Positions 281 through 44,064 of a DNA stretch of 64,000 bases are shown one piece after another; within the stretch, counting starts at the first letter, position 1; each line of letters begins with the position of its first letter. The notes beneath the pieces are model-generated. The model was not told where the DNA came from, did no database searches, and saw only the letters and a list, made by a program, of their open reading frames with translations. Position numbers and translations under genes: made by a program. Source of the DNA: Heteronotia binoei (lineage: Eukaryota); assembly GCF_032191835.1 (NCBI RefSeq), contig NC_083237.1, forward strand, positions 24,056,001-24,120,000, read 5' to 3'.

Positions 281-1090
281 CTAATATGGTGCCCCTCCTG
301 GACCAGCGCCCTAGGCAGCCACCTAGTTTGCCTAGTGGAAGAGCTGGCCCTGTTTGCGGGACCTTTTTGTAAGCCTATATGACTGGCTCTAATAGGGGAG
401 GGATGTGCGCAGCACTGAAGCCCCATCCTCGATGTAGAAAATCAGTCAGCCAAAGCATTTGCTGCCACTGCTTGGCAGTTGTAAGGAGTACAAACTTGAC
501 TTTAAATTTTAAAGTAACAAACACCTACTTCTACAATGTAGTAGGGAGCCGTGGCCCAGTGTCCCAGGTTCGACCCCTGGCATCTCCAGTTAAAAGAATC
601 AGGCAGTAGGGGATCCTGAGACCCTAGACAGCCCCTGCCAGCCTGAGTTGACAACACTGACCTTGATGAACCTGCCCTCTTGGAGCCGGAACAGGGCAGC
701 CAGGAACTGGGACTGCTGGGTTCTCTAAAGCCGTCAGCCTCTGAGTCTCTTCTGGATTCTCTGGATGAAATGTGGTGTTTGGTGTTGATATGGGAGGTCC
801 AAGTTCCATATGTCTGTCTTGCTCATGAAGCTGTGATTATAAAAACCAGATAAGGATATGCAGGCGGTCACCTGTAATTCTTGCTTTAAGGTTTTCATCA
901 GTTTGGGCCCGGCAGGTTAAAGCAGGGCATGGATGGCATTTGGGACTCTCTGGGGCGGGGTGGGTTGAGCAGGGGCATCTGTATGAACGGGGGAAGGTGT
1001 TAGCTCACTGAGTCATGGCAAGGGAGGCAGCCATCCTGGGCTTCCTTCATAACGCCTCTCCCATCTCTCTCTCTCTCAATTCTGCTGCAG

Positions 1091-1440
1091 GTTCAGCCTC
1101 TGCTCCCGCCCCGTCTGCCTCCGGCACAAACCCCTTCCAGGCGACGGCAACCACCCCCCTTTCGCTCAACCAGCTGCGCGTCAGTCCGGTTCTCTCCCTG
1201 TCCCAGCCAGCACCCCCAGCTTTCGCCGCCACCGCTCCCATGGTCTCCGTGTCTCCCATGGCCCCCGGGATGCCCTTAGCCTCGGTCTCCCCAATGGTGG
1301 GGGTGCAGCCCTTGGGGGCTGTTCCGCCCATGGGCCTCCCTGCCATGGGGCTGCCCCCTCCTGCCATGCCTCCCGCTGGCATGGTCCCCAGCAGCACCTC
1401 GGCCTCCACCGTGGGGAGCACCAATCCATTCTTGCTATAA
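1091..1440 (+). CDS. EPN1: Epsin-1, last coding exon (C-terminal NPF region)
   Basis: Polypyrimidine tract and acceptor ctgcag|gttc at 1091 (phase 1). Translation ...GTNPFQ...[11 protein letters not shown]...TNPFLL* matches the recalled EPN1 C-terminus (TNPFQ..TLNQLRLSPV...NTNPFLL). TAA at 1438-1440. Confidence 0.92.
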
Positions 1441-5093: not shown

Positions 5094-6782
5094 ACTTAGA
5101 GCCTGACAGCTCATCCTTTAGGATGGTTCATTGCCTAGATTTGTAAACCACTTATCCTTTAGGGTGGTAAATTGCTTCGATTCAACACACTTTGGAACAT
5201 CTCTGGACTGTGAGAAAATTGTCTGTCTTGGGAAAGGAAAGAGCCAAGTACTTGGGCCTCATACCAAGGCTGGTGGGCGGAGGGCCTTCTGAGTCGAGGG
5301 TCTGTGTGTGATCTGAGGGTCAGGCATGGGCAGAGCTCGGTTACTTCTCCGCTATGTGATGGCTCAAAGCTAAATAATGAAGCAGCTCCATTCGAAAGTA
5401 TTGCAGACTTGATATTGAAAGCCAAGTTCTGCGTTGAAGCATGGGGAGAAAAATCCCATTTCTGCCCCTGCAGGAGCTCAGATGTTTTATGGCTGTCCTC
5501 AGGCCGCCCCCAACTAGTCATTAAGAGTATCTCCTGCTGAAGGACTGGCACTCCAGCATTCTTTCTTGTGTTGCCATTTAAAGACTGCACCTTAGCTTAG
5601 ATTCACTCTCACTATCTAACCTGGGGGCAGACAAACAAACTCGTGCCCTGTGGGATTGAAGGAGTTAACTGCAGTCCCTTCTCCTTATTCCGAGGTAAGT
5701 GTGGCCACTTGAGTACAGACATGTGGGTAAAGACATCAGTCTCCCAATGTTCTTAACAATTAATAAAGAAACATTCATTTTTGAAACTCTGGTGCAAATG
5801 AGCAAAGATCAAAAGAAAGTGATTTGAACCCTGAGTATCTTAAAAGATGGTTAGAATGGTGTTGGAAAGTGCCGTCCAGTCACAGCCGGCTTGCAGCAAC
5901 CTAGTAGGGTTTTCAAAGCAAGAACCATAAAGAGGCGGTTTGCCATTGCTTGCCTCTGTTTAGCCACCCTGGACTTCCTTGGCGGTTTCCTATCCAAGTT
6001 CCAACCAGGGCTGACCCTGTTTACCTGATAAGATTGGACTAGCCATCAGGTCCAACGCCACAGAATAAAGGCAGGTTATTTATTCTTACGATTGCACATT
6101 TCAGAGATGTTTCAGTTATCTGTGTTTCACGATATAGGGTTACTGCCCAGTGTTCAGCAGCATGTGGTCTTGGTTGATGGTGTAATGGAACTCCGGGGTG
6201 CGAGAGCTCCAGGTGAGAAGGCAACACAGCTAAGCTAACTCAGAAATAAGGCCTTCTTCAGCCTGCCCAGGGGCTTTAGAATCTACACTGGCCACTCCTG
6301 GAAGTAATCTTCCTTTTCCTATCCCAAGGGGAAGATGTGCTTTTCCCCCAGTCCTTTCCTGTCCCAGATTTGGTGGTTTAAATGTGATTTTTTTCCCTGT
6401 CCTTTGTTCTTCCCGGGCTAAGTCCACTTGCATATTGTGGAGCTGGATAGATCCAGTGCCGAGAGAGGAGTCCTAACCAACCTCAATTTCCCCTTGTTTC
6501 CAAAGCTTGTGAAAGATGCTTCATAGCCTCCACGCTTGTGCACAGTGCCAACCCAGCTATTGTCACCTTTTATGTAAATTCTGAGGGGTGAGGCGTTTTA
6601 TTGCAAGGTAATTAATTTGTTGTGGCATCGCGGTATGCCTTTCAAAGGATGGATTCAGAGCTTGATGCCCTAAGAAGAATAGATATCAGACCCCAAAAAA
6701 GGTCATTATTTATGGTTAACAGTTTAATTTCTGGCTTTGTTGTATCTTGGATGCCTTTGAGCTCTAAGCATGAGGCTGGGTT

Positions 6783-7131
6783 CTAGCTTGGTGGGCTCCA
6801 GATATGTGGTGGGCTTGGAATGGGTTCAAGGTTTTGGTATGTTGGCATGTTTTGGTATAACGGTTTGTTTTGATATGTTGGTGCATTTTGGTATAGTGGT
6901 TTGTTTTGGTATGTTGGCACGTTTTGGTATGCTGGTACATTTTGATATAGTTGGCTTCGAGTAGATGATGGGTTCGGGGCATTTGTGGAGTTTGGAGTCT
7001 TCTCTGCTGGAGGACTTGCGACACCTGTGTCTTCTGACCACTCTGAACTCCACGAGTCATCTGAACTTTCTGTGCCATCATCCTCTTGAGCTTTGGTCTC
7101 TCCTTTCCGTGCCCTTTTGCGACGGTAGTAC
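6783..7131 (-). CDS. Unassigned IZUMO gene exon 7 (cytoplasmic tail)
   Basis: ctctttgcctacag|g acceptor, phase 2; basic stop-transfer YYRRKRARK, acidic Ser-rich stretch, 7 YQN repeats, TAG at 6785-6783; AATAAA on the minus strand at 6597-6602. Confidence 0.87.
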
Positions 7132-10100
7132 CTGTAGGCAAAGAGAGAAATGAGCACTAAGGCTGCAATGGGAAGACACTGCTTTAGTGTCTGTGGCTGT
7201 GATCTATGCTGAAAGAGGTATTCTAATTCTTAGTATTTATGTATCCTTTTTAGCAAGCATTCATAAGAAGAGAAGCCATGTTGGATCAGGCCAATGGCCC
7301 ATCCAATCCAACACTCTGTGTCACACAGTGGCAAAAAAACCCAGGTGCCATCAGGAGGTCCATCAGTGGGGCCAGGACACTAGAAGTCCTCACACTGTTG
7401 CCTCTCCCAAGCACCACAAATACAGAGCAGGATTCCTCCCCCCTTTCTGGCCTCTCAGCAACTCTAATTAGAAGCCCTTTACACAGAGAGCAATCCCTAT
7501 TAGGACAGTCAAAATGCAAAATCTTGATTAAACACGCAAAGTCCATAGCAGTGCTCTTAATTCCTAATCAGAGTCTTTTTCGATCAGAGCATACTGACTT
7601 TCTTTGATTCTTGGTTGATGCATGCAATTTAAAATCAAGACAAGAAAGTAGTTTTATGGGTACACTTGTTACCTTGCTGTAATCCTTACAACAGCCTTAC
7701 AAAGCAGGCCAGATGCAGGCCCACATCTGAGAGGAAGTGGTTTGCAGAAGGGTGGGTGGCAGCTAAGATATAAAACAAATTCTTGAGTCACAGCCGGTGT
7801 GCTGCCCTCCTCTCCAGGAGTACCCTATAATTGTATGGTCTCCCAGATTTAAGATTGTGGGACTCGCATAGCCAGGGCTTTTTTGTAGCAGGAACTCTTT
7901 TGCATATTAGGCCACACCCCCTTGATGTAGCCAATCCTCCTGGAGCTTACAGTAGGCCCTGTACTAAGAGCCCTGTAAGCTCTTGGAGGTTTGGCTACAA
8001 GAGAGGGATGTGGCCTAATATGCAAAGGAGTTCCTGCCACAAAATAAGCCCTGTGCATAGCCATAGACTGCTGCCCCCCCACATACATATATCTGTAGAC
8101 TGTATAGCCTTACCACACTCCAACACCAGCAGCAAGCAGGATCACAAGGGTCACCAGCACACCCGCAAGAACGTTGGGCCCTGTAGGAAAGAAACAGCAC
8201 CTCTTTCAGAAAGTGGAAGAGATAATCTGGGAGGGAGACAAGTTAGCAAAGGTCTCTTAGATCTACAGCAAATCAGTGCTGGCTCTGCAACCAGTATAGG
8301 TTTGCCTGGGGCAGGGGAGAATCTGTCTGCATCTCGAGAACAAAACTGGAGTGCAGGAGCACCTTTAAGACCAACGAAGTTTTATTAAGTTTAACGCCCC
8401 CCTCCAAAAAAAAAGACCAACGAAGTTTTATTGAGAATGTAAGCTTTCATGTGCTAAAAGCACACTTCATCAGACAATGAAATGGGGTACAGTGTGCAGT
8501 GCTACATATAGCTTGTGGGCAGGGTTAAGCATGCAAAATAATACAAAATAAGAATCCAATGGCAAAATAGTGAAATTAACAAATTGAAAGAATAACAGTT
8601 TTTGGTCTGGATAGTATAAGTTGCCTGGGAAAACAGCAAAAAACAGTAAACATGTCGGAATTGGAGAATGATGGTGAGAATGGCAGTAAATGAGAAACCA
8701 GCACCCTAAAAAAAAGTAAGATCGCCAGCTTGTGACTGCAAATTGCACTGCTGTGCCTGTCCTAAACGGATGCAAAGGAAATGTAAATACTGTTGTGCCA
8801 CGTGGCTTAAATCAATAGTAAGTGCAGAATTGCTTTGTGGCATAAAGATGTCAGCAGAAGCTCCCAAGTTACATACAAGGTATGTAGGAAAGTAACTGCA
8901 GGTATCTGCAAGGAGCACGTGGGCCCTGGGGCTTCAAGTGCCATTCTCTTGGGCAGATAGTGATCGAAGGGCAAAGATAACTAGGCCAGGAGAAGAAGAT
9001 TGTTCCTTTGGGTCTGCCTGCCCCATAGCCCTGTGAACAGGGCTAGCTGAATTAAAGAACTGAGCCTAAGGTGATCAGGTGAACTCCAGGGCTGTGTGTG
9101 TCCTCTAAGCTTCTACTCTGCCTTACTGTAATTGGCTGCTAGTCTGTCTTGGCTGGAGGAGGAGAAGCAGCTGTGATTGGTGGATGAGGTGGAGATGGCA
9201 ACGGAGAGAGACCAGTTACCTGCACATAATAAGGAATCGTTGCAGGGTGCTTTGAGCAGGTGGCAGTCCCTACACTCTGCCACTTCATAAGGTCGAAACC
9301 GGATCTGCTCTGTGTAGGGAAAGAGAGAAGGGTAGTGAGATTTTAATGTGAGCACACACAGAGGAGAAAGTGTCAAGGGACACCCTGAGTTGTAACTGCT
9401 GAAACCGTATGTTGTTATGTGGGCATGCGATAACAGCTTGTGGGGAGGTATTTTTGCATACCCCACTGGAATGAACCTGTCTGTGCACCACCACCATGCC
9501 ATGCTGCCCTCGGGAAAATGATTATGCATTCAAAACAATCCTGTATTTGTTGAACTTTGCTGCTCAAAGGTCACTACAGCAGGATCTCCATTGCTCCAGG
9601 GCTACTTACTCTGTTAATTTAATCCTCCCAGAAATAGGGTGGTCCCACTTCGGAGGAGGGAGGAGAAATAGCTGGATCCTACCCTTTATGCTTAACGGTA
9701 TTCTCTCACACACAAGCAAATCGGAGGCTAACACACACAGATGCCAGATGGCTAGACGGGCACATTTAGTCTGGGCAGATGGACTCACCGCAGGAGGCGC
9801 TGCAGACTGTGAAATTGTAAAGAGAGAAACAAGGGATGAGACAGACCTGGGAAATCTGGTCCCCTTCTGGCCAAAGAACCCAAATCCTAACTCTTCCCCC
9901 AACCCCAACAGGCCATCTGTGGAATCCATCCCATACAAGTTCAAATTGGCCAGAGGTGCTGCCGCCACCTCCTCTTAACAATCCAGTCTTAAGCTCACAG
10001 CCTAGTTTTGTGTCTTCACTGGTCAGGCAACCCAGCTTCTGCGCTGGCAGTCCCCAAAACAGACTAGAATCTCTGCTTGACCCATAAGCAGACTTGGGAA

Positions 10101-13100
10101 GCGGAGGGTGATCTTGCAAATATACATGTGTCTTAAGTAGGGAAGCATTACCACAATATGATTTCTCTCTACCCGCTCCCCTCACCTCTTGAATGCAGCT
10201 GTTGCCATGACCCAAACATGAGGTGGATACATTTTAACAGGATTAAACAGACATGTCTAGCTTTTCCAGTCACTGGTTGCTTCTCCAGGAGCAGCTTGTC
10301 CTGTTTAAGAAGGGTGCTGCTCTGACTTCCGGGATTGGAAAATGGTGAGCTGAGTTGCTTTCCCTAACGGGGGCAGGCTGGCACTTCTGTTCAGGGTAGT
10401 AAAAGGCAAATTAATGCCTTCTTCCTACGTTTCTCAGCTAGAGAATTGTCCAAGATATGCACAGATACTTTGAGGAGACTTACCTTGGCTGAAAGGGAGT
10501 CCCGGGGGGGGGGGTGGGGATCCTTTGAGGGATCTCCGGAGAGAAGTTGCATATTCATCGTCTGCAGAAGTTTCGAGAGTCATTAATTTGACATAAGCGT
10601 GACAGGATCCAAACCTTCTTTTACAATTTTAAACATCTAATCTATAAAGGACTGGTGTTGATTTGGATAAACTACAGAAAAAAGGTACTGATTGCTATCT
10701 CTTCACTCCGGGACTAATTAAAGTTAAACAAAACAAAAGTAAAAGGTGGGAGTTGGAAATACTGAAAGCCTGAAAGGAGAAGATGATAAGGGGCTAAATT
10801 TGAACTTTGTAAACTTAAAAGACAGTGTTAAGAGAAGAAAGGAATTTATTGTTTAGTCTATCTGTGGTTGAGGAGGCAGCCCCATCGTCACAGATCTGCA
10901 GCATTCACAGTCAACACAGGAAATATGTCAGATATCGTGAGATTTCTCTACCAGTGAAACGAGATTTGAAGGCAAGAAAAGCAGGAAGTATTGGAGGAAG
11001 AAAAAGGAAGTCAACAAAGTAAACAGCCTACTCTAGGATTATAATACCAGAGAGAAACATCGGTGACCATTGTTGTTGGGAGGACTAAGTTTTAACATCG
11101 TTTTTAAAGTGAGTGGGACATTAAAAATTGGTGGAGTTAACAGATTTGGCAATTTAAAAATTACTACTGTTGGATAGTAGATAACAAGATTTGAACTGGT
11201 AAAAGGGAAAAAAGAAACATTTTTTAAAGTGAAGCAAAAGTTGCGACTGCCATTTTGGGAGAAATAAAAACTTTAAACATTAATATCTGAGCCTGGGAGG
11301 CTAAGAGGACAGCGAAATTGGGTGCATTGGAAAGGGTAACCTTCACTTTATCAAACCTGATGGTTCAAATTTAATTTGGTGAGATCAAAATTTTTGATCT
11401 TGTTTTACATGTCAGACCCGAAACAAACTCGTGCTAGGTCTGCTTCAAGAGAGAAAATGCAAGCCCAATTAGATGCAATGGAAGCTAGGATAATGAAGGG
11501 GGTGAAAGAAATGATAACTGCCTCTAAAAAAATAAGAAAGGATATTGAGGACTCAAAGAAAGAATTAAAAAAAGAAATAGAGAATCTCAGAAATGACACT
11601 GTGGTAATAACAAAGAAAGTACAAGAAGTGGAAGAGAGAGTGAAAACACATGACTCCACCTTGTTAAAATTACGAGAAAAAGTGACAATTCATGACTGCA
11701 AACTGATGGAAACTCAGATCCATCTGAGAGGTGTACCTGAAGATGAAGAATCAGACCTGAAAGAATACATAATAAAAATAATTGCAGAATTTTTGGAGGA
11801 AGATCCTGAAGGGAATAGAAATATGTATGTCTATATGTATAAATTCACTCTATGCAAAAAAGAACAATCTGCCAAGAGATGTGGTCATAAGATTTATGAC
11901 AAAAGAAATGGTGGGAAAGATCATGAATGAAAACTTTGAAAAATCATTGACAGTGGGAGGCAGTAGAATAAGAATTATGAAAGAACTGCCAAGACAAGCA
12001 CTAACTGACAGAAAGGCATATAAAAAATTGACAGAAAAACTACATGACAATGGAATGAGGTACAGATGGATAATACCTGAAGGTTTGAGCTTTGAACTTC
12101 AAAGGAAAAGGATTACAATCACAAATATACAGGAACTGCGTAGATTTTATGAAGAAAATAAAGAATTTGCACCATGATGGATTATAAATTGATATCTTGG
12201 AATGTAAATGGACTAAATTCACCACAAAAAAGAAAGGCAACATTTCACTGGATAAAAAACAAAATTGTAATATAATATGTTTACAAGAAGTGCATATTAG
12301 ACAAAAGGATTATAAATTTCTATGGAATAAACAATTGGGACTAGAATTTTTTACATTGGCTGAACAGAAGAAGAGAGGAGTAGTCTTTTATATTAAACAA
12401 GAATTAGACCCAAAATTGGTATTTAAAGATAAAGATGGAAGATATATAGCAGTAGAAATTACTTTTGAGTGCAAAAAAAAGTTGTTGTTGGGACTTTATG
12501 CTCCAAATGGTGCTAAAGACATTTTTTAAAAAAAAATTACACAACATTTTGATGAAGTGACCTATGAGCAAATTTTATTGATGGGGGACTTTAACGGAAC
12601 AATTCAAAATACTATAGATAGATCTGCAAAGAAAAAAATGATAAAGAATGGAAATTGCCAAAGTCTTTTTTTGAATTGGTTAAACAGGAGAGTTTGGAAG
12701 ATATATGGAGGAAGTTTAATCCTGAAGTACGGAACTATACCTTTTCAGCTAGACATAGCTCTTTCTCTAGAATTGACATGTTGTGGGGTACTAAAGATTT
12801 GGGACTTATAACAAAGAAAATAGAGATATTACCTAAAATAGGAGCTGATCATAACCCAATAATGTGGATTACAAAACTGTCGAAAAAGTCAAGAAGATGG
12901 AGATTAAATGAAGACTTACTACAAAATAAAGAAATAGTGACATCTCTAGAAAATGAAACCAAAGTGTACTTCCAAGTAAATGACAGAGAGGATATAGAAT
13001 TTCAGACGGTATGGGATGCCTACAAGGCAATAATGAGAGGATTACTAATAATATTGAATAATAAAGACGAGAGCAAAAGATAAACAGATGTTGGACATTC

Positions 13101-16100
13101 AAAATGAAATTAAGAAAAAAGGTGAATTAAGGAAAAGGCCAGGAAAAAAGAAAATTATTTGGGAGATTAGAATATTGCAAGCACAAATGAGACATCTGTT
13201 AAATAAAAAATTGGAATGGAATTTGAAAAAATTAAAACAGAAATCTTTCGAGGGAGCGAATAAACTTGGAAAATATTTGGCCTGGCAATTGAAGAAAAAG
13301 AGAGAAAGTAAAATTATTAATAAAATTGTGGCTGATGGAAGAGAGATGGTAGATCAAGAAGGAATAAAGAGAGAATCTTTTAAATATTATGCTAAACTAT
13401 TTAAAGGTGTTAAAGTAAAGAAGGAAAAGTTGGAAGCGTATTTGCAGACGATTAAAATAGCACCCTTAACTGATTATATGGGAAAAGTTTTGAATGATCC
13501 AATTGAAAAAAAATAGAAATTGAAGTAGCAATTAATGCAATAAAAATTGGAAAGGCACCTGGACCAGATGGATTTACGGAAAATTTTTTTAAAACGTTTA
13601 AAGAAGAATTAATACTGAGACTTCAAAAATTAATGAATGTGATAAGAATAAATGGGAAAATACCAAATACATGGAAGGAAGCGGTAATTTCGTTGATTCC
13701 AAAGGAAGATAGAGATGTCACTAATGTAAAGAATTATAGACCAATTTCATTATTAAACAATGATTATAAGATCTACACAATCTTAGCAGAACGGCTTAAA
13801 CAATATTTAATAAACTTTATAAAGGAAGACCAAGCGAGTTTTCTCCCTAAAAGGCAAATAAGAGACAATATTAGAACTGTTGTAAATATTGTAGAATACT
13901 ATGAAAGACATCCAGAGAAGAAAGTTGCATTATTTGGTGTAGTGGTTAAGTGTGTAGTTTGGTGTAGTGGTTAAGTGTGCGGACTCTTATCTGGGAGAAC
14001 CAGGTTTGATTCCCCACTCCTCCACTTGCACCTGCTGGAATGGCCTTGGGTCAGCCATAGCTCTGGCAGAGGTTGTCCTTGAAAGGGCAGCTGCTGTGAG
14101 AGCCCTCTCCAGCCCCACCCACCTCACAGGGTGTCTGTTGTGAGGGAAGAAGACATAGGAGATTGTAAGCCGCTCTGAGTCTCTGATTCAGGGAGAAGGG
14201 CAGGATATAAATCTGCAATTCTTCTTCTTCTTCTTTGCGGATGCAGAGAAAGCTTTTGATAATTTGAATTGGGACTATATGTTTGCAGTAATGGAGAAAA
14301 TAAAGTTGGGGGAAAACTTTATAAGAATTATAAAAGCAATTTATACTGAACAACGTGCAAGGTTATGTATAAATGCAGATCTTACAGAAGAAATGATAAT
14401 CAGCAAAGGTACAAGGCAAGGTTGTCCACTTTCACCATTATTATTTATGACTCTTGAAATTTTATTGGTGCAAATACAAGATGATGAAGAAATTGAAGGA
14501 ATGAGAATTAAAGAATTTTCCTATAAATATAGAGCATTTGCAGATGATATAATGTTTATAAATGAAAATCCTATGCAAGTAACACCTTTGTTGTTAGCCA
14601 AAATACAAGATTTTGGAGAATTGGTGGGACTTTATGTTAATAAAGAAAAGTCAAAAATTTTGTGTAAAAATATGCAAGTAAGTAAACAAAAGGAATTGCA
14701 GAGATTAACTGGATGTGAAGTTACCCCTAAAGTAAAATATTTGGGCGTGGAAATAACAATGAAGAATATTGATCTGTTTAAAAACAATTATGAAAAGCGA
14801 TGGCGTAAAGTGGATGAAGATATGATAAAATGGAACATGCTTAATTTGTTATTTCTTGGTAGAATAGCTGCAATTAAGATTAACATCTTGCCGAGAATAA
14901 TGTATTTGTTTCAAACTATTCCGATTGTGAAAGACAGTAAACAATTTAATAAATGGCAAAGAAAAATTTCAGAATTTCTATGGGCCGGGAAAAAACCAAG
15001 GGTTAAAATGAAAGTTTTAACAGATGCTAAAGAAAGAGGAGGATTTCAACTACCAGATTTAAGATTATATTATGAAGCAGTTTGTCTAGTGTGGATAAAA
15101 GATTGGGTGACGCTGTTGAATAAAAAACTTTTAACATTGGAAGGTCATGGAAATAAATTCGGCTGGCACGCTTATATGTACTATGGAAAGAAAAAGTCGG
15201 ATGTTATTTTTTTCTCACCATTATATAAGAAATAATCTAATAAATATTTGGATGAAGTACAAGAAATATGGCGATGAGAGAAAACCACTATGGATAGTGC
15301 CAGCAGAAGTAATAAGAATAACAGCTGAGACAGGAGAGGAAAAAGGGATGTCATATAATCAATTACTAAAAATACAAAGCGGTAAAATAGAATTGAAAAC
15401 TGCTGAAGAGTTGAATAATAAATATGATTGGTTTCAAATGCAACAAATAAAAAGTTTGGTGGAAAGCGATGTTAAAATTGAAGGAATAAGATGAGAACAA
15501 ACAGAAATGGAAAAAGTTCTGCTTGGAGATAATGAAAAATTAATTTCAAAAATCTATAAGTTACTTTTAAAATGGTCTACGGAAGATGAAGTAGTGAAAT
15601 CTCAAATGATTAAGTGGGCAATTAATGTAAATAAAGAAATACAGATGGACACATGAGAATATTTGTGGAAGAACTCTATGAAACTCTCAACATGTCAGAG
15701 TATTAAAGAAAATTGTTTTAAGATGATGTACAGATGGTATATGACTCCTAAAAAGTTTGCAAAGATGAACAATAAGATGCCAGATAGATGTTGGAAATGT
15801 AAAAAACATGAAGGTTATTTCTACCATATGTGGTGGACTTGTGAAAGAGCAAAAAAGTACTGGCAGATTATTCAACAAGAGACTTCTAAGATCTTGGGAT
15901 ACAAATTTAACACAGTTGCAAAGACTTTTCTGTTGAGATTACAAATGGAAAAATTTCCAAAAGAAGATAGAACTTTAATTTGGTACTTTCTCTCAGCTGC
16001 TAGGACATTGTATGCGCAGTTGTGGAAGCAAGAAAAAATACCAGAGAAATGGGATTGGATTGTAAAAGTTATGACATGGAGTGAAATGGACAAGTTAACA

Positions 16101-19100
16101 AAAACCTTAAGAGACTATGATTTAGAAGTATTTAAGATGGAGTGGGAAAAGTTCAGAAGATACATAGAAAAAGAGTGGAAAATAAAAGGACATTGGACAA
16201 TTTTTGATAATGATTGAGTACAAGAGGGAGGAGGATATTAATTTTGGTTCTTATTAATTAAGGGTACCTTTAATATTAAGATTTTAAGTATATAACACCA
16301 GCGGGGGTCAAGTAACAGGGGGAGGGTGGGTAGAAAGTAATATATGGGATAGATTAAAAAAAAAGTAATGATGTAAGAAATTGAAATTATTACCATATGT
16401 TACTAATAAAATTGTTTGAAACCTAAACCTAAAGACGGATGCTGCTCTGGGTTCTGGCCACTTGCATGGGTGCGTCACATCCAGTGCTCCCTCTAAGCTG
16501 AGTGAGTGTGAGCAAGCTCACAGTTTTTTAGTTTCCAGCTCACATGTTTTTGCCTTAGCTCTGGAAAAATGCCCCCAGAGCAAACTGATTTATGCAGTAG
16601 CTCACAACCTTAATGCCAGTAGCTCACAAAGTGGAAATTTTGCTCACAAGACTCTGCAGCTTAGAGAGAGTATTGGTCACATCTACCTTCGTGCTTGCAA
16701 TAGTGTTTAAAGTGGCAGCACAGTGTCATTAGAATGTCTTTGTGTTGTTTTACTGTCTGCAGGGCTGGGCTCAGGCAGGTCCTTCTGGGTAGGGGAGCCT
16801 AGAATATGGTGACACCGCTGAGAAGGCCCTGCTAAGCCCAGACGCCCGTGGAATCCTCTTGAATGCAGCTATTTCCAGGAGTCATTTTGTAGAAAAATAG
16901 GTGGTGGAATTCAGGGGTTGTTATGCAGCTGCACCTACTATTCAATGGACAAGGTGGGGAGGAGGGGGAACACTCAGAAAGGTTCAGGAACTGTGCTTCT
17001 GTGAGTTCCTGCAGAATTTGAGGCCTGGCTATTTCCATGACCCAAACATGAGGTGGGTCGATTACCCAAACATGAGGAGGGTGGGTAGAGAGAAATCATA
17101 TTGTGGTAATGCTTCCCTACTTAAGACATTTCAGAAATTGGCAATTTTCACTCATGACGTCAAATTTGTAACAAACTTGTAGAGGGCATGGAGAAAATAC
17201 GCTTGGATCCCTTCACAAACTGCTCCTCCTTGTTACCTACATATCTGCAAAGAAGTACACCCCAGATCTTTCTATGGGACCTAGATACTCCAACTACTTT
17301 GAAAGGTGGATGTGATGTTTTTTGGTGGAGGGGTTTCAGTCAGCCAGAAAAGAGGGCTTTGGACAGCTGGGCTGAAGAGGGTTTTCCACAGTGCAGTTCT
17401 TCAAAGTTCTGCCTCCTCCCACCACTATTCTTCAGAGCCGGGGCCCTGCCCTCCTTTGCCTGTGTTAACTCTTGGAGGGGAGTGAGTGGCACTTACTTTC
17501 TTTCAGAAAGGTGCTGGATGCCTCTATCAATCTCTTGCTGAAATTCTGTTTTGCCTGCCCTGCCTTTGTCAGGAGGCGCTCAGGATCTGTGGGTAAAAGG
17601 AGCTGAGGTTAATGGAAGTCAGGGCTGGATGGCTGGAGGCCAGAGAGCTGGGTGGGAAGGAACTTACACTGACCCTCTACAATCTGGGAGACTCAAGTTC
17701 CAGTCCTCCACTCTGCCATGAAGCTCACTGGGTGACAGGCCTAATTGTCACACTCCCAGCTTCATTTACCTCACAGGGTTGTTTTGAGGATGCAAAGGAG
17801 GGAGAAAAGAGGGTTGTTATTAATTATTTAAATTTATGCCAACTCCATCTTATGGCCAACGCCGGGCTCTAGGCAATGTACAACTGTGGCCTGGGAAATT
17901 CATGGAGATTTGTAGTCAGTGTCTGCGGGGGTGGGGTGGGGATCTAAAGAAGGATTTCTGCCTGGAATCTATGGTATACCATAGGTATACATCCCTTTCT
18001 CCAGGGGAAGTGATCTCTGCAGTCTGGAGAACAGTGGTAATTCCTGGAGACCTCCAGTGGCCACCTGGAGGTTGGCAGCCCTAGCAGAGAATCAGGTGTA
18101 CTGCCCTGAGCTCTTCAGATAAAGGACAGGGTTTAAAAAAAATGTATTAGGTGGATGAGAACTTCTAGCAAGTGGGGTCGGGGGTGAGCCCACACATGTC
18201 TACCTATCATAGATGGCAACATTAAATGACCCGCTTGTGTAAAGAGGCTACCACATCAGGCACATGGTGCTTTTTAAAAGAAATCATTCAATGAATGATT
18301 GACTGATGGCTGAATTAATCATTTGCCAATATGTGGATCCAGTTGAAGGAAGCATATCCAAGTTCACGTAGCACAGATTAATGAGCCTGTAGCAGTTATG
18401 AAGCCTTGACTCCTGAGTGGTGAATTCATTAAGGGTGTTATAATGTATAAGACCCAGTGCTTTTTTGGGGCAGGAGCACACAGGAGCAGAGCTCCACCTG
18501 AGCTGGCCAGGGCTGCAGCTGGCACGCTGGAGAAGGCACAGGGAGGCACCTTTAAATGCCTCCCCAGTAGCTTCAGCCTTCTCCAGCACACCCGCTACAG
18601 TGGGTGTACTGGGAAAGGCAAAGGGGAGCTCCTGCTGGGCTTTTTAAAAAAACAAAAACCCTGATAAGACCAGTCAGCAACTGGAAAAGGAAATGCTCAG
18701 CTCCTACCTTTTTTGTTTTCCTGTGTGATCTGTTGAAGCTGAAGAAAGAGATTCCCAGTCTCACGCTGCATATCTTCCCACTCTGTAAATAACAAGGGGG
18801 GACAGACAAAGATATGCCTGGTGATGTTTGGTCCTTATCTAGTTCTCAGGTCTAAGCACAACACCTGTTCTACCCCCCTGGCCTAACACATCAGTTTTTC
18901 TGACCTTTTCATTCTCTGTGTCATCAGGACTGTAAGCAAGAGAAGGTGAGAGGGAAACCCAGTGTCCAGGTAGGGCAGCTGAATGGAAGGGCTACATACC
19001 TCCCAATATTGTTTTTCAGACTTTCTGTTGTCCCAGACACTGCTTCATGCCAATTTTTCTCCTTACTTGCATATTTGACATGGCATCTTTCAGCCCTGAA

Positions 19101-21916
19101 GATAATCTTGGGGCACTTTCTATGGTACGCCCAGTCTGGTGGGCCAGAATTCCCAAACAGTTTGAGGCTGTGGCTACCGTTAGAATGTCGAGAGGGGGTG
19201 ATGAGTGCCAGCACAAAATGGCTAATGGAATATCTCTCTCTGCATGGCTAATGGAATATCTCTCTCTCCCTGGGAAGAAGGAAATCCTAGAAAAGGAATA
19301 GAACCACACACTGACTGAAGGAAGCCCAATTGCTTTCCAATCTTCCCTATCCTGTAGCAGAAAGCTTTTTCATTTGTATAATGGAAGCATATAACAATCC
19401 CTGCCTTACAGTGGCCCCACCCACATTCTGAAAAAACTTAGCAAGTTGAGAAACCTTGAGGTAGGCCATTTTGGTGCTGCTGTGAACTCATGCCAAGAGT
19501 ACACCTTGGTACATGTTCCGCCTTTTCCAGTAGCTTCATATGTCAGAAAACCAGCAACAGCAGGTGTTAAATGGATAATTAATTCTCCATTCCTGATATT
19601 CTCATTGAAGAGCCTCTACATTTCTGAGGAGCTCTAGAATGATTTGAAAACCACTGCTAGGTAATGCAGGTCCCACACACTGCGTAAACCATGTGTGTGT
19701 TTTGTGTGAGAAGCTGGGCATCTGATCCAAGATTACATCATTCCCCATTCCCAATTAAGATTCCAATGACCTGGGTGTTTGGAAGAAGAGAATGTCTTGT
19801 GGGAGACTCAAAGCACCTTTGTGTACACCTCTCCAACAAGAAACAGATGAATCTTTAGTTAATTTTCACAATCTATTCCACCCAAGGTATTGCGCTGCCC
19901 ATCTTTTCATCCCCATGCTCAGGTGATGGCGTGAGAAATCAAAGTGGGCAAATTTAATAAAAACAGGCTTTCAAATCCTGTGGAGTACAGGCCCAGAACA
20001 TTCTCCACTGCAAAAATCTACTTCACTTCATTCAAGGAACCCATAAAAGCAACAGCAGTTTCAAACAGTTCACATACATCACATATGGCAGCTATGCTGT
20101 CTGAACTAGCCTTGTGCTTGGACTGCTGATTGGCTGGGAGCCCTGTAGTAATTTGCTATCACGGGGCCGTTATCAGCCTTGGCAATTTTATTCTGAGGTG
20201 GTTGACTATACTGGATAAGAACATACGAACATAAGAGAAGCCATGTTGGATCAGGTCAATGGCCCATCTAGTCCAACACTCTGTGTTACACAGTGACTAA
20301 AAAAACCAGGTGCCATCAGGAGGTCCATCAGTGGGGCCGGGACACTAGAAACCCTCCCACTATGCCCCCCCAAGCACCAAGAATACAGAGCATCACTGTA
20401 CCAGACAGAGAGTTCCAGCAATATGATGTGGCTAATAGCCACTGATGGACCTCTGCTCCACATGTTTATCCAATATCCTCTTGAAGCCGTCTATGCTTGC
20501 AGCTGCCACCACCTCCTGTGGCAGTGAATTCCACATGTTAATCACCCTTTGGGTGAAGAAATACTTCCTTTTATCCATTCTAACTCGACTGCTCAGCAAT
20601 TTCATTGAATATCCACGAGTGAAGAATGATCCCCTTCACTCCTCTCCCATCTTCCCAGTACTGCCTAACCCTCATTTTTCTGTATCTGACCAACTGTTCT
20701 CTATATGTTGAATGGACTCAGGATGGCTTTATGGGATACTGACCCATTTGACCTTGATACTATCTAAATGTTGCTACTGTCATTATGATACTATTTAAAG
20801 AATTCAGAGTATTCATACTTGATCACAAAGGTCTGATCCAATAAAAGATCTTTGGCTATTTTTTGAGAACAGATAGAACTTTTTCTCCCTCTCCCAAAAT
20901 ACCAGAACTCAAGGGTGTCTAATGAAGCTGATGGACAGTAGATTCAGGATGAACAAAAAGGAAATACTGCTTAACACAATAAGTGATTAAAATGTGGGAT
21001 TTGCTGCCAGAGGATGACAGCTGCAAGCACAGACAACTTTACATAGGGATTAGACAGATAAGTGGAGGACAGGTCTATCGGTGGCTACTAGACATAGTGA
21101 CTAAAGGCGATCTCCACATTCAGAGGCAGTAAACCTCAATACTAGTGCTGGGAGGAAGGCCTTGGCCTCTATGCCCTGTTTGTTCGGGCTTCCAAGGCAT
21201 CTGGTTGGCTACTGGGTGAGACCGAATGCTGGGCTAGAAGGACCACTGATCTAATCCAGCAGGACTTTTCTTGTGAGAAATTTCCTAATATCTAAGGAGC
21301 AGGGCATAGAATCATAGAGTTGTAAGGAACCTCCAGGGTCATCTAGTCCAGCCCCCTGCACAATGCAGGAAATTCACAAATACCTCCCCCTAAATTCACA
21401 GGATACTAATTGCTGTCAGATGACCATCTAGCTTCTTGTTTAAAAACCTCCAAGGAAGGAGAGCCCACCACCTCCTGAGTAAGCCTGTTCCATTGAGGAA
21501 CCGCTCTGTCAGGAAGTTCTTCCTAATGTTGAGGGGAGTTTGTGGTGTCCAGACCACAGGATTACAGGGCTCTTCATACAGGGCCTACTGTAAGCTCCAG
21601 GAGGATTGGCTACATCAGGGGTGTGTGGCCTAAAATGCAAAGGAGTTCCTGCTACCAAAAAAGCCTACTAAGGAGTCATCACTTTGCTCCCCCCCTCTTT
21701 CCATCCTGTACCCAGAAATCTGTTGCCGCAGGTGTCACATTTTCCAGTGCTCCCCAGGAAAAGCGTCTCCAGCTTTTCAGCAACATCTTTGTTCCCACCA
21801 AGGAGAAGCTGCACATCATAGCGGAAATACTTGGCTGCATACGGCCAGCAATGGAGGCACGTGTCAGCCAGCTGCACAAACAGGGCCCAAATCAGCAGTC
21901 CAGGTAAACATGCCAT
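6783..21916 (-). CDS. Unassigned IZUMO-family type-I membrane protein, 7 coding exons, about 297 aa
   Basis: complement(join 21712-21916, 18708-18782, 17497-17586, 9789-9806, 9220-9309, 8114-8180, 6783-7131) = 894 nt. All introns are GT-AG with compatible phases and no stops. Protein: MACLPGLLIWALFVQLADTCLHCWPYAAKYFRYDVQLLLGGNKDVAEKLETLFLGSTGKCDTCGNRFLEWEDMQRETGNLFLQLQQITQENKKDPERLLTKAGQAKQNFSKRLIEASSTFLKEICSASCEQIRFRPYEVAECRDCHLLKAPCNDSLLCAGPNVLAGVLVTLVILLAAGVGVWYYRRKRARK...(xYQNxP)x7...WSPPS*. Exon sizes and Cys spacing mirror IZUMO2/3 in this window. Confidence 0.88.
6825..6950 (-). repeat. Coding 18-bp tandem repeat, 7 units (xYQNxP)
   Basis: LYQNVP AYQNVP TYQNKP LYQNAP TYQNKP LYQNMP TYQNLE; 126 bp = 7 x 18. 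Confidence 0.92.
7873..8053. mobile_element. Palindromic hAT-like MITE (cagggc TIR family)
   Basis: TIR cagggctt/aagccctg; TSD cgcatagc/tgcatagc. Confidence 0.8.
8114..8180 (-). CDS. Unassigned IZUMO gene exon 6 (transmembrane helix)
   Basis: tttcctacag|...|gtaagg; 67 nt, phase 1-2; GPNVLAGVLVTLVILLAAGVGVW. Confidence 0.87.
8357..8475 (+). mobile_element. Possible Penelope-like terminal fragment
   Basis: gcacctttaagaccaac..ttttatt..agctttc motif; similar pieces at about 60545-60600 and 63025-63110 (minus). The family call is from memory only. Confidence 0.35.
9220..9309 (-). CDS. Unassigned IZUMO gene exon 5 (CxxC...C...C)
   Basis: ttccctacacag|...|gtaact; 90 nt, phase 1-1; EQIRFRPYEVAECRDCHLLKAPCNDSLLCA. 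Confidence 0.85.
9789..9806 (-). CDS. Unassigned IZUMO gene micro-exon 4 (CSASC)
   Basis: Long pyrimidine tract tttcacag|18 nt|gtgagt; equivalent to ACSEDC (IZUMO3) and ACDKATC (IZUMO2). Confidence 0.85.
11409..12177 (+). pseudogene. L1 ORF1 (coiled coil plus RNA-binding region), frameshifted
   Basis: ORFs 11376..11930 and 11782..12177 in different frames; heptad-like N-terminus followed by an L1 ORF1p-like C-terminus (LRGVPE, PRDVVIRF). Confidence 0.8.
12174..16217 (+). pseudogene. L1 ORF2 (APE endonuclease, RT, CCHC), with several frameshifts and stops
   Basis: LISWNVNGLN, ICLQE, MGDFNG, SRID, DHNP (endonuclease); NYRPISLLN, QGCPLSPLLF, AFADD (RT); CWKC...HMWWTC; split across many ORF fragments. 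Confidence 0.92.
13933..14233 (+). mobile_element. tRNA-derived SINE (Squam3-like) inserted into L1 ORF2
   Basis: Pol III A/B-box head tggtgtagtggttaag..ggtttgattccc; (CTT)n tail; interrupts KKVALF|FADAEKAFD. The family name is tentative. Confidence 0.85.
17497..17586 (-). CDS. Unassigned IZUMO gene exon 3
   Basis: cttttacccacag|...|gtaagt; 90 nt, phase 1-1; DPERLLTKAGQAKQNFSKRLIEASSTFLKE. Confidence 0.85.
18708..18782 (-). CDS. Unassigned IZUMO gene exon 2
   Basis: ttatttacag|...|gtagga; 75 nt, phase 1-1, the same length as exon 2 of IZUMO2 and IZUMO3; EWEDMQRETGNLFLQLQQITQENKK. Confidence 0.85.
20216..21535. mobile_element. Cluster of CR1 3'-end fragments (about 20216-20620 minus, 20895-21275 plus, 21303-21535 minus)
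   Basis: cataagaacataaga.. and atagaatcatagag..gtcatctagtcca termini typical of CR1 3' ends; related copies at about 7259-7430, 23895-24015 and 45800-46020. Confidence 0.6.
21712..21916 (-). CDS. Unassigned IZUMO gene exon 1 (signal peptide, CLHC, extra CDTC)
   Basis: ATG at 21916; donor ctgg|gtacag; 205 nt, phase 1; lies in ORF 21668..22045. Confidence 0.88.
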
Positions 21917-37000: not shown

Positions 37001-37922
37001 GGGCCCAGCCCATTATTTTAATGCAATTCTACAGCTAACCAAGTGGTATAAGCACAATAGTTAAGGTCCTGTGCCAACTGACCAGGTGGGAGGGTGGGGA
37101 GAGCCTTGCTTGCAGAGACATTGTTGGGGTTTGGAAATGGCTTGCTCTACATGGTTCTCTTTGGAAGCAGATGGTACTGGGAGGAGGAGAATGCACAGAT
37201 CTATACTTGCCTTGAGCTTCATTGGAGACAGGTGGGTTAAAACGTAATAAATAAAAAGTGATGAAGAGAAGGTTCATGAAATTAGGGCACAACCATAGCG
37301 ACAGGGTAGCACTGTTAGCATTATCTATTTTTTTAAAAAAATCTTGGAAAAAATGCATATCAGCACCACTATACAGAACTGGGGAGGATGGAATGTTTAT
37401 CCTTTCTGGAAGGGAAAAATGGTTATGTAATATTTTAAAGAGGCAAAGCTTGTTGTCAAATAATGTCATGGACACTAGCCAATAATTGCCTCCCACACTC
37501 ATAAAACTACCCTTCCACACAACAACCCACAAACTGTAACAGATGCCCTCACTGGAGAGAGAAAATTATTTTTCTTGGAGGAGAAACCTTTTAGTTGATG
37601 GGAAGATGCCTGGGTAATGATTGCATTTAATGCCCAGTTAAGTAACTGTGTTTGATTGGTAGAGCCAGGCTGTACCTGCAAATCCAGCAAACTGGCTGGT
37701 AGCATAATGTGAGAAAAAATCTCCCTCAAGACCCTGCAGCAGTGCTTCAGCGCGTGCCTTGAGGCGAGAGTCATGGATCTGACGCTGAACGAGCCCAGTC
37801 CTGAGCTTAGCCAAGTTATCCTTGAACTTTTCATCACACTGTAGACAGCCCCAAAGGCCTGTGGGCAGGAAGGCCACAAGCTGTAGGACCAACAGCTGCA
37901 GAGGAGAGCCCAAGACAAGCAT
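31070..37922 (-). CDS. IZUMO2: Izumo sperm-egg fusion protein 2, 7 coding exons, about 225 aa
   Basis: complement(join 37676-37922, 36356-36430, 35087-35173, 33896-33916, 32677-32757, 31283-31406, 31070-31112); GT-AG and in frame; gccATG start. WGCLQCD..LKARAEALLQGLEGDFF, DQALLDELV, ACDKATC, VLDCVRC, FVDSQDRLTLRY, TM, YWRNRLYLYV* align to recalled human IZUMO2 (WGCLQCD, LQARAGAVLMGMEGPFF, DEPLLEELV, FVDRQPRVALQY). Minus-strand AATAAA at 30878-30883. Confidence 0.9.
33115..33396 (+). mobile_element. Squam3-like SINE
   Basis: Same head, body and CTT-type tail. Confidence 0.8.
33543..33714. mobile_element. MITE nested in a tRNA SINE
   Basis: TSD gttaaaag/gttaaagg; the SINE resumes after it. 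Confidence 0.7.
36544..36812. mobile_element. MITE with internally triplicated subunit
   Basis: cagggc TIRs; three aggaactcatttgcatattaggcc-like units. Confidence 0.7.
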
Positions 37923-38306
37923 GGCTGATCCTCAGCCAAGATTCTGGCCTACTTCAGGGTTCTCCAAAGAATGAAGTCACAATTGAAGTTGCTGTTTGTG
38001 GAATGTAGATCAGAGCCATGTTAAGCCATAAAGTCAGATCCTAAGAGGTTGCCATGAGTTTGGCAATAAACAGATTGGAAACCTTAGAAGAGGGTTGGAA
38101 ACAGATTGGAAACCTTGGAATACTTAGAAGAACTGCAGGATCTCATGGCCAGGACATGCGTTGGTTCCTTGGGATGGAATGTTTTCAACAAAAAGTCTAA
38201 GGCAACTTTGATGAGCCTGTGGATATTTTTAGAACGGATAGTAGGCATCACTACAAAATGGCTCCCATGGGAGGTTGGAAGAGTCACAGAATGGCTGCCA
38301 TAAAGT

Positions 38307-43828: not shown

Positions 43829-44064
43829 TAGACTACAGAGTTGGAGTACTGCAACTGCAATTCTGCAACTGCAATTCCTTGAAAAGCCACTAGCTGGATG
43901 GTTCCTACTGAGAGACAGTAAGGCTGCTTTATAATGGTAAATTACCTGCAAATATACAAACACAAATCTGTTACCTGCATGGCTGCAGTTGTGTGTTCAA
44001 TTGGATGAAAAGCTAACCTCATGATAGTTCCTTGCATGGGGTGTGCATGTTTTCTGCTTCTATT

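What the first reader, a model, noticed from the sequence alone, without database searches (positions are those of the whole stretch)
6825..6950. Seven tandem YQN motifs: a possible signalling tail on a gamete-fusion-type protein
Seen: an 18-bp unit repeated 7 times in which Y-Q-N is invariant while flanking residues vary, following an acidic Ser-rich stretch (ESSDDSWSSEWSED). Established: pY-x-N is the GRB2-family SH2 consensus, and acidic Ser stretches suit CK2. The IZUMO2 and IZUMO3 tails here are short and lack such arrays. Inference: a multivalent, LAT-like phosphotyrosine scaffold coupling an IZUMO ectodomain to GRB2 signalling or clustering. Invariance alone could also reflect recent expansion.
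Basis: partly seen in the sequence, partly recalled or inferred. Interest (0 to 1): 0.8.

Follow-up and report, generated by a model that had tools for sequence, protein, structure and literature searches.

The report
Tyrosine-motif tail on gecko TEX51
The seven YQN repeats are real and form the cytoplasmic tail of the sperm protein TEX51 (an IZUMO relative) in a gecko-like lizard; the motif is kept by selection and matches GRB2 docking sites, but nothing yet shows that it is phosphorylated or even expressed.

Summary
Observation confirmed. On the minus strand, seven 18-bp units (6831-6956) each encode xPxYQN, preceded by an acidic Ser/Trp-rich stretch.

The exon (7131-6783) is the last coding exon of TEX51, not of an IZUMO gene. 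TEX51 is a recently described IZUMO/SPACA6/TMEM95 (IST) superfamily member. The true splice acceptor is at 7131, and the membrane helix lies in the upstream exon 8180-8114.

YQN is under purifying selection. Across 15 motifs in three gecko genomes there are 9 synonymous and 0 non-synonymous codon changes, while the flanking codons differ at about half of their non-synonymous sites. Arrays with different unit lengths (6, 11, 13 and 17 residues) expanded independently in different geckos.

In ten squamate species, 35 of 40 internal tail tyrosines have Asn at +2. The motif Y-[Q/E]-N-[V/I] matches the published GRB2-SH2 optimum.

Against a conserved function: Anolis, Pogona and the five snakes have Phe/Ile-containing proline repeats instead, turtles have GDGAPA repeats, and human TEX51 has almost no tail. 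Expression, phosphorylation and SH2 binding are all untested. The only RNA-labelled runs cover exon and intron alike and show no splice joint.

Verdict: a lineage-specific, selected YxN docking array on a known sperm protein. The LAT-like GRB2 reading is the leading hypothesis but unproven (about 0.35).

The parts
21712..21916 (-). TEX51 coding exon 1: start codon, signal peptide, first CXXC (CLHC), first helices
   Evidence: tblastn with Gekko kuhli TEX51 P0001, 81% identity; ATG and GT donor
18708..18782 (-). TEX51 coding exon 2 (helix, conserved EDMQRETGNLF)
   Evidence: AG/GT borders in phase
17497..17586 (-). TEX51 coding exon 3 (long helix)
9789..9806 (-). 18-nt microexon encoding (I)CSASC(E); included in most squamate TEX51 models, skipped in some
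   Evidence: Pattern search with AG/GT borders; matches Paroedura KEICSASCEQ
9220..9309 (-). TEX51 exon encoding the beta-hairpin with the second CXXC (CRDC) and two further Cys
   Evidence: strands at the equivalent residues in the AF2 model
8114..8180 (-). TEX51 transmembrane exon (GPNVLAGVLVTLVILLAAGVGVW)
   Evidence: 91% identical to the Gekko TM segment; donor TG|gt completes the Trp codon with G at 7131
6783..7131 (-). TEX51 last coding exon: whole 115-residue cytoplasmic tail plus stop (TAG 6785-6783)
   Evidence: single copy in the genome; dN/dS of the pre-repeat part 0.2-0.43, against 0.35 for the ectodomain
7104..7130 (-). Basic stop-transfer segment YYRRKRARK directly after the TM helix, which fixes the cytoplasmic topology of the tail
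   Evidence: read from sequence; conserved W-Y-Y/R-R-R-K-K in all squamates
7029..7085 (-). Acidic Ser/Trp-rich stretch (EDDGTESSDDSWSSEWSED), conserved in kind across squamates
   Evidence: CK2 or sorting role only inferred
6831..6956 (-). Array of seven 18-bp units encoding xPxYQN (SQL, VPA, VPT, KPL, APT, KPL, MPT before each YQN), with a 36-bp super-period
6786..6824 (-). C-terminal PIPSPPHIWSPPS, identical in Gekko, Sphaerodactylus and Eublepharis
6723..6728 (-). ATTAAA, a candidate polyadenylation signal about 55 nt after the stop
   Evidence: read from sequence; not tested

Best explanation
The array is the distal half of the cytoplasmic tail of TEX51. TEX51 is a testis/spermatid type-I membrane protein whose small ectodomain (four-helix bundle, beta-hairpin, two CXXC motifs) has the IZUMO/SPACA6/TMEM95 (IST) fold. 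The host is a gecko-like squamate. In this lineage a short linear motif, Y-x-N(-x-P), ancestral to squamate TEX51 tails, was multiplied by slippage of an 18/36-bp unit to seven copies and has since been held by purifying selection. Most likely (inferred, about 0.35 on its own) the tyrosines are phosphorylated in spermatids or sperm, and each pY-Q-N is then read by a GRB2-family SH2 domain. The tail would thus be a multivalent docking platform that ties this membrane protein to SH3-linked cytoskeletal or trafficking machinery. That would fit the acrosome-anchoring and head-shape defects of mouse Tex51 knockouts. Shown here: the gene identity, the topology, the selection on YQN, the independent expansions and the match to the GRB2 consensus. 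Inferred: phosphorylation, the reader domain and the cellular role.
For: Gene identity. phmmer with the tail finds full-length orthologues that NCBI names testis-expressed protein 51 in 13 squamate species. A seven-exon model has canonical splice sites in phase. The AF2 model (pLDDT 70.7) has four helices, a hairpin and a TM helix. Its Foldseek hits are IZUMO2/3, human TEX51 (highest identity, 27%), TMEM95, SPACA6 and IZUMO1. TEX51 was published as an IST member (PMC12615630). Selection. Within the array, the YQN codons show 20 pairwise synonymous and 0 non-synonymous differences, while the flanking xPx codons have pN 0.50. Fifteen YQN in three gecko genomes carry 9 synonymous and 0 non-synonymous changes. 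The pre-repeat tail has dN/dS 0.2-0.43, similar to the ectodomain at 0.35. Independent expansions: unit lengths of 6, 11, 13 and 17 residues in four geckos. Motif. 35 of 40 internal tail tyrosines in 10 species have N at +2, with no F-x-N; where Podarcis lost the Tyr (HADVP), the Asn is lost too. The GRB2-SH2 consensus is pY-E/V/Q/K-N-V/I/L with N+2 essential, and known GRB2 ligands include yQNV, yENVP and yVNVP. Mouse knockout phenotypes.
Against: There is no evidence of transcription or splicing of this exon in this species. The three RNA-labelled runs cover introns and exons alike at low depth and show no 8114-to-7131 joint. There is no phosphorylation or binding data anywhere; the TEX51 paper does not mention tyrosine or phosphorylation. 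Anolis and Pogona have no internal tail tyrosine, and the snakes only Tyr that do not follow the motif (one YSN in Pantherophis); all carry PPPFDIPS or PPEFDMPS repeats in the equivalent place. Turtles have GDGAPA repeats and human TEX51 almost no tail. Whatever the motif does is therefore dispensable for the core TEX51 function. Six-residue spacing cannot hold an SH2 domain on every motif at once. Pro or Thr/Leu at -1 and the lack of nearby acidic residues are not typical of good tyrosine-kinase substrates (general knowledge).
Confidence: 0.45

Rival explanations
1. The functional element is a non-phosphorylated proline-type docking motif whose shared core is [N/D]-[I/V/M]-P(-x-P-P). It would be read by an SH3, WW, EVH1-like or still unknown domain. 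Tyr is a lineage-specific flanking residue, not a phospho-acceptor.
For: The same slot in Anolis, Pogona and snakes holds F-D-I-P-S-P-P-P or E-F-D-M-P-S-P-P repeats. Hemicordylus has YENIPSPP next to ELDIPKPP. P at +4 is kept in 29 of 40 motifs, and all squamate tails end in IPSPP-type sequence.
Against: In the window species the amplified unit has lost the PxPP part but kept Y, Q and N without a single amino-acid change. +3 is free (V, K, A, M, L) while Y and N are not. Tyr is never replaced by Phe in ten species, although that is a one-base change.
Confidence: 0.2
2. The tyrosines are YxxPhi sorting signals read by clathrin-adaptor mu subunits. They would steer TEX51 to or from the acrosomal or plasma membrane. 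The acidic Ser/Trp cluster would be a second trafficking signal.
For: 31 of 40 motifs have a hydrophobic residue at +3, including the lacertid YAEV and YDTV motifs that lack Asn. An acidic cluster with conserved Trp lies upstream.
Against: Three of the seven motifs here (YQNK, YQNA, YQNK) and three of four in Phrynosoma (YENP) lack Phi at +3, while Asn at +2, irrelevant for mu binding, is nearly invariant. One signal normally suffices, so repeated independent multiplication is not expected (general knowledge).
Confidence: 0.15
3. The Y/Q/N/P-rich array is a low-complexity 'sticker-spacer' segment that promotes self-association or clustering of TEX51 without a specific reader domain.
For: The composition of the array is about half Y+Q+N with regularly spaced Pro. 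It is multivalent and disordered by nature. The ESM Atlas and Pfam recognise nothing.
Against: Strict invariance of each of three residues in register, together with conservation of Y-x-N in tails with much longer and different spacers, points to a specific motif rather than to composition.
Confidence: 0.1
4. The array is a neutral slippage product in a fast-evolving disordered tail and has no function of its own.
For: TEX51 tails are repeat hot spots with different repeats in each lineage. One contig in an RNA-labelled run has 36 extra bases in the array.
Against: Zero non-synonymous against 9 synonymous changes in 45 YQN codons, with pN 0.5 in the adjacent codons. The motif is retained in four major squamate lineages.
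Confidence: 0.05

Closest known systems
Mammalian TEX51 (human A0A1B0GUA7; mouse Tex51), IST superfamily
   Same: Orthologous by NCBI naming and by best sequence identity among fold hits (27%). Same ectodomain plan: signal peptide, helical bundle, beta-hairpin, two CXXC motifs, single TM helix (PMC12615630).
   Different: Human TEX51 is 166 residues, and the fold alignment already reaches residue 153, so it has almost no cytoplasmic tail. The 115-residue tail with an acidic stretch and a YxN array is specific to squamates, and the seven-copy form to this lineage.
LAT, LAX1 and NTAL-type transmembrane adaptor proteins
   Same: Single-pass membrane proteins with a disordered cytoplasmic tail, an acidic stretch and several Y-x-N motifs. 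LAT yVNVP and LAX1 yENVP are near-identical to the squamate TEX51 consensus Y-x-N-[VI]-P.
   Different: Those adaptors have almost no ectodomain and carry juxtamembrane palmitoylated Cys (general knowledge). Their motifs lie about 20-45 residues apart by the LAT residue numbers; here they are 6 apart. TEX51 has a folded IST ectodomain and no juxtamembrane Cys in geckos. There is no sequence homology, only motif convergence, and phosphorylation here is untested.
IZUMO1, IZUMO2 and IZUMO3
   Same: Same fold superfamily. IZUMO3-like and IZUMO2-like genes lie directly next to TEX51 in this window and in other reptiles.
   Different: TEX51 does not match Pfam IZUMO. [quoted passage not shown] The neighbouring IZUMO genes carry no YxN array.

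Membership tests
TEX51 / IST superfamily | N-terminal antiparallel helical bundle followed by a beta-hairpin hinge | tested here: met
   AF2 model of the closest full-length gecko orthologue (Paroedura, aligned with 11 squamate sequences): helices 25-38, 43-54, 71-91 and 96-125; strands 138-142 and 147-151; pLDDT 70.7. Foldseek top hits are only IST proteins. The window's own ectodomain was not folded because it is spliced; it is 77% identical to Gekko.
TEX51 / IST superfamily | Pair of CXXC motifs | tested here: met
   CLHC in exon 1 and CRDC in the hairpin exon of the window gene. Both Cys pairs are invariant in 12 squamate sequences.
TEX51 / IST superfamily | Signal peptide and single C-terminal transmembrane helix (type I) | tested here: met
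   Hydrophobic N-terminus MACLPGLLIWALFVQLA. TM exon 8180-8114 followed by YYRRKRARK.
TEX51 / IST superfamily | Testis/spermatid-specific expression | tested here: inconclusive
   Only three RNA-labelled (metatranscriptomic) runs hold the locus. They cover introns and exons evenly and show no splice joints. Expression is known only for mammals.
IZUMO family (Pfam PF15005) | Significant match to the IZUMO domain profile | tested here: not met
   No Pfam IZUMO hit for TEX51 orthologues at E<=10 or for window exon 1. The two neighbouring genes do match.
GRB2-family SH2 ligand (pY-x-N class) | Asn at +2 of the tyrosine | tested here: met
   7 of 7 here; 35 of 40 across ten squamate species. N+2 is essential for GRB2 SH2 binding.
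GRB2-family SH2 ligand (pY-x-N class) | Preferred E/Q/V at +1 and a hydrophobic residue at +3 | tested here: met
   +1 is Gln in 7 of 7. +3 is V, V, M, L in four motifs and K, A, K in three. The published preference at +1 and +3 is 'less stringent'.
GRB2-family SH2 ligand (pY-x-N class) | The tyrosine is phosphorylated in vivo and binds the SH2 domain | not testable with these tools
   Needs phosphoproteomics and binding assays. The structure tools here do not model phosphotyrosine.
LAT-like transmembrane adaptor | Minimal ectodomain, juxtamembrane palmitoylation Cys, and motifs spaced for simultaneous SH2 binding | tested here: not met
   Folded ectodomain of about 145 residues. No Cys after the TM helix in geckos (WYYRRK). 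Motifs are 6 residues apart. It resembles LAT in motif content only.
YxxPhi adaptor-sorting signal | Bulky hydrophobic residue at +3 | tested here: inconclusive
   4 of 7 here; 31 of 40 across species.

The most novel reading that the evidence does not exclude
Squamate TEX51 is a receptor-like hybrid: a gamete-fusion-family (IST) ectodomain fused to a LAT-type multi-pYxN adaptor tail. An extracellular or intra-acrosomal binding event would be converted into GRB2-family-driven clustering and actin or trafficking responses in spermatids or sperm. That would be a signalling capacity not known for any IST protein. It would have been gained at the base of squamates, amplified independently in geckos, and lost in snakes, Anolis and Pogona.
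Probability: 0.2. Interest if true: 0.75.

Novelty: new variant of a known kind. Interest (0 to 1): 0.45.

Why it matters
No IST-family protein (IZUMO1, SPACA6, TMEM95, TEX51) is so far known to signal through its cytoplasmic tail, and the two TEX51 knockout papers read here do not discuss a tail function. A selected, repeatedly amplified Y-x-N array on TEX51 in lizards gives a concrete, testable handle on what the cytoplasmic side of such a protein can bind. It may also help explain the acrosome-anchoring and head-shape phenotypes of Tex51 knockouts. It is in addition a clean natural example of a short linear motif multiplied independently in sister lineages and then replaced by a different repeat in others. 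If the tyrosines are not phosphorylated, it remains a lineage-specific curiosity of a fast-evolving sperm protein tail.

Tried and rejected
1. Taking the long ORF at face value (start near 7162, with LVLISLFAY as the TM end). Rejected: orthologues show the TM helix in exon 8180-8114, and the acceptor is at 7131.

2. An Ig-like exon at 9142-9342, suggested by eye. Rejected: wrong frame, and no Pfam hit. The real exon there is the hairpin exon 9309-9220.

3. Pfam on the tail: only noise (Mitofilin, E 0.1). Pfam on ten other minus-strand ORF pieces: nothing.

4. PDB sequence search with the IZUMO2-like exon: no hit.

5. ESM Atlas search with the tail: no usable hit.

6. phmmer hits P0002-P0009, P0011-P0013 and P0016-P0019 were not followed. 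The three inspected (P0003, P0006, P0019) are unrelated repeat proteins matching only the low-complexity array.

7. Profile search with full-length sequences was swamped by low-complexity tail words. Repeating it with the ectodomain only reached turtles but not mammals, birds or crocodilians.

8. RNA evidence. The runs found are labelled metatranscriptomic and hold intron and intergenic sequence at the same low depth, so they say nothing about expression.

9. Earlier notes of this scan: none for this place or for these words.

10. A complex prediction with GRB2 was not attempted. Phosphotyrosine cannot be modelled, and no suitable GRB2 sequence was in hand.

11. The TM and tail exons of the two neighbouring IZUMO genes were not assembled. 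A strict hydrophobic-segment scan found none.

Full report
**1. The observation**

Tandem Repeats Finder reports an array at 6831-6954. The period is 18 (6.8 copies, 72% matches), with a better-scoring 36-bp super-period. The coding sense is the minus strand. There the open frame reads, after an acidic stretch, seven units xPxYQN, with Tyr codons at 6947, 6929, 6911, 6893, 6875, 6857 and 6839. It ends with LEPIPSPPHIWSPPS and TAG at 6785-6783. No other place in any of the six frames of the window has four or more in-register copies of a tripeptide, or three or more YxN within 42 stop-free residues.

**2. Which gene**

A phmmer search with the tail against 1.8 billion representatives returned four proteins that align over the whole tail (P0001, P0010, P0014, P0015). 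The many other hits match only the low-complexity array.

P0001 (Gekko kuhli, 277 aa) and its relatives are named "testis-expressed protein 51" by NCBI in 13 squamate species. These include Paroedura, Hemicordylus, Pogona, Podarcis, Zootoca, Sceloporus, Anolis and six snakes. An ectodomain-only profile also reaches turtles.

tblastn with these proteins places all parts of the gene on the minus strand of the window. Canonical AG/GT borders give an in-phase model:
- 21916-21712
- 18782-18708
- 17586-17497
- an 18-nt microexon at 9806-9789 (CSASC)
- 9309-9220
- 8180-8114 (transmembrane helix)
- 7131-6783 (tail)

The long ORF that begins near 7162 is partly intron. The acceptor is cctacag|G at 7131, and its G completes the Trp codon begun at the end of the TM exon.

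The product is 297 residues with the microexon. It consists of a signal peptide, an ectodomain of about 145 residues, a TM helix, a basic stop-transfer YYRRKRARK, and then a 115-residue cytoplasmic tail. The exon is single-copy in the 2.63-Gb assembly. An ATTAAA lies about 55 nt past the stop.

**3. Fold and family**

Pfam sees nothing in TEX51 orthologues, not even IZUMO at E<=10. An AlphaFold2 model was made for the closest full-length gecko orthologue with 11 other squamate sequences. It has mean pLDDT 70.7 and shows four helices, a two-stranded hairpin and the TM helix.

- Foldseek against Swiss-Prot models returns, in order, IZUMO2, IZUMO3, human TEX51 (27% identity, the highest), TMEM95, SPACA6, IZUMO1 and IZUMO4.
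- Against the PDB, ranks 1-11 and 13-15 are IZUMO1 crystal structures, SPACA6 is rank 12 and TMEM95 rank 33. All are weak, with a best E of 0.08.

This agrees with a 2025 paper that added TEX51 to the IST superfamily on structural grounds. That paper found hypofertility, loosely anchored acrosomes and cytoplasmic remnants in a mouse knockout (PMC12615630). A second knockout was fertile, but more than 80% of its sperm heads were malformed (PMC12917576). So "gamete-fusion-type protein" is right at the superfamily level, but the gene is TEX51, not an IZUMO.

A maximum-likelihood tree of ectodomains puts the window sequence with the geckos (support 92/86), outside Gekko+Paroedura+Sphaerodactylus.

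**4. Is the invariance of YQN more than recent duplication?**

Yes.
- Within the array, the 21 YQN codons use TAC/TAT and AAC/AAT. That gives 20 pairwise synonymous and 0 non-synonymous differences. The three codons before each YQN differ at half of their non-synonymous sites (pN 0.50).
- I fetched the orthologous exon DNA from Paroedura and Gekko. Together with the window they hold 15 YQN motifs, carrying 9 synonymous deviations from TAC-CAA-AAC and no amino-acid change.
- The non-repeat part of the tail has dN/dS 0.43 (against Gekko) and 0.20 (against Paroedura), compared with 0.35 for the ectodomain+TM exons. The tail therefore evolves like translated, constrained sequence.
- Unit length differs among geckos: 6 residues here, 11 in Paroedura, 13 in Gekko and 17 in Sphaerodactylus. 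Eublepharis has two YENIP motifs. The motif was thus multiplied independently.

**5. Distribution**

In five gekkotans, a cordylid, two lacertids and two phrynosomatids, 35 of 40 internal tail tyrosines have Asn at +2. Of the same 40, 31 have a hydrophobic residue at +3 and 29 have Pro at +4. Phe never replaces Tyr. The one Podarcis unit that lost Tyr (HADVP, against YANVP in Zootoca) also lost Asn.

Other lineages differ.
- Anolis and Pogona have no internal tail tyrosine and carry PPPFDIPS repeats.
- Snakes carry PPE[F/Y/I][D/N][M/I]PS repeats.
- Turtles carry GDGAPAEQ/GNGAPADL repeats.
- In human TEX51 (166 aa) the fold alignment already reaches residue 153.

Given the squamate tree, Y-x-N is most simply ancestral to squamates and was lost at least three times. 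A core [N/D]-[I/V/M]-P is shared by both kinds of repeat.

**6. What the motif looks like**

GRB2-family SH2 domains bind pY-x-N. A phosphopeptide-array study gives pY-E/V/Q/K-N-V/I/L, with N+2 essential and +1/+3 less stringent. It lists the GRB2 ligands FLT3 yQNV, LAX1 yENVP and LAT yVNVP; the LAT YVNV and YENL sites are classical GRB2 sites. The squamate TEX51 consensus Y-[Q/E/A]-N-[V/I]-P is therefore a textbook match.

In the window species the pattern of constraint (Y and N fixed, +3 free) is what a YxN reader predicts. It does not fit a YxxPhi reader: three of the seven motifs have K or A at +3.

**7. What is not shown**

- Expression. The only public runs holding the locus are three RNA-labelled metatranscriptomic runs from one study. 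Their contigs lie on introns and exons alike at depth 2-8, one runs straight across the 7131 acceptor, and no splice joint is seen. They say nothing about transcription.
- Variation seen in those runs. A C>T change at 6846 turns YQNM into YQNI. One contig has 36 extra bases inside the array, which would be two more units in frame. The reference array has no repeated word of 21 bases or more that could create an assembly loop, so this may be a real length allele. It rests, however, on a single contig of depth 2.9.
- Phosphorylation, SH2 binding and localisation are untested, and these tools cannot test them.
- Spacing. Six residues is shorter than the footprint of an SH2 domain (general knowledge), so at most every second motif could be occupied at once. 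The longer units of other geckos do not have this problem.

**8. Verdict**

This is a real, translated-looking, selected array of Y-x-N motifs on the cytoplasmic tail of a known sperm protein, specific to part of the squamates and maximally amplified in this lineage.

| Reading | Probability |
|---|---|
| Phosphotyrosine/GRB2-class docking | about 0.35 |
| Non-phospho proline-type motif | 0.2 |
| YxxPhi sorting signals | 0.15 |
| Low-complexity self-association | 0.1 |
| Neutral repeat | 0.05 |

I found no mention of this tail in the TEX51 literature I could search (19 papers). It is a new variant of a known kind, of moderate interest.

Noticed in passing
window 6783-37931 (TEX51 minus strand; IZUMO hits at 22239-22412 and 25503-25577 plus strand, 37641-37931 minus strand); loci L002, L003, L004, L005: Three IST-superfamily genes sit together. 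TEX51 lies head-to-head with an IZUMO3-like gene, followed by a convergent IZUMO2-like gene, with an epsin (ENTH) gene on the other side. The same order is called in Paroedura, Gekko and Podarcis, and IZUMO-TEX51-ENTH in the turtle Mauremys. This suggests that TEX51 arose as a tandem paralogue of IZUMO genes. The 2025 TEX51 paper argues from structure only and does not mention synteny.
   Followed up: partly
window 9789-9806 (minus strand): An 18-nt microexon with AG/GT borders encodes CSASC and adds two cysteines just before the beta-hairpin. It is present in most squamate TEX51 models (ICSFSC or ICSASC) but skipped in the Gekko kuhli model and in Hemicordylus isoform X2. It may be alternatively spliced.
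   Followed up: partly
orthologue tails (P0022, P0026-P0028, P0030, P0034, P0036-P0038): The TEX51 cytoplasmic tail is a hot spot for lineage-specific tandem repeats: PPPFDIPS in Anolis and Pogona, PPEFDMPS or PPEINMPS in snakes, a long EDK expansion in Anolis, and GDGAPAEQ/GNGAPADL octapeptides in turtles. Snakes also have a juxtamembrane Cys-Cys (WYCCRKK) that geckos lack.
   Followed up: partly
window 6819-6963, runs X1 and X3: A contig in run X3 carries 36 extra bases inside the YQN array, which would be two more units in frame. X1 and X3 share 6846 C>T, which changes Met to Ile at +3 of the sixth motif. These may be length and sequence polymorphisms, seen only in low-depth contigs.
   Followed up: partly
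window 7029-7085 (minus strand): The acidic Ser-rich stretch contains two Trp (SWSSEWSED), conserved in geckos. At least one Trp in an acidic Ser context is kept in the cordylid, lacertids and phrynosomatids. This resembles Trp-acidic trafficking or motor-binding motifs more than a plain CK2 cluster.
   Followed up: no
window about 11360-16210 (plus strand): A LINE with long ORFs, including a reverse transcriptase (Pfam RVT_1, E 6.5e-21 at 14159-15232), lies inside the long TEX51 intron. Several SINE-like repeats recur across the window.
   Followed up: partly
window 1012-1437 (plus strand) and 43259-43996 (minus strand): An NPF-rich C-terminal exon, likely of the epsin gene that flanks TEX51 in other reptiles. 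Also an ORF with a weak Mpv17/PMP22 Pfam match (E 0.09).
   Followed up: no
window 55480-55713: A run of 234 N (assembly gap or masked); left as is.
   Followed up: no
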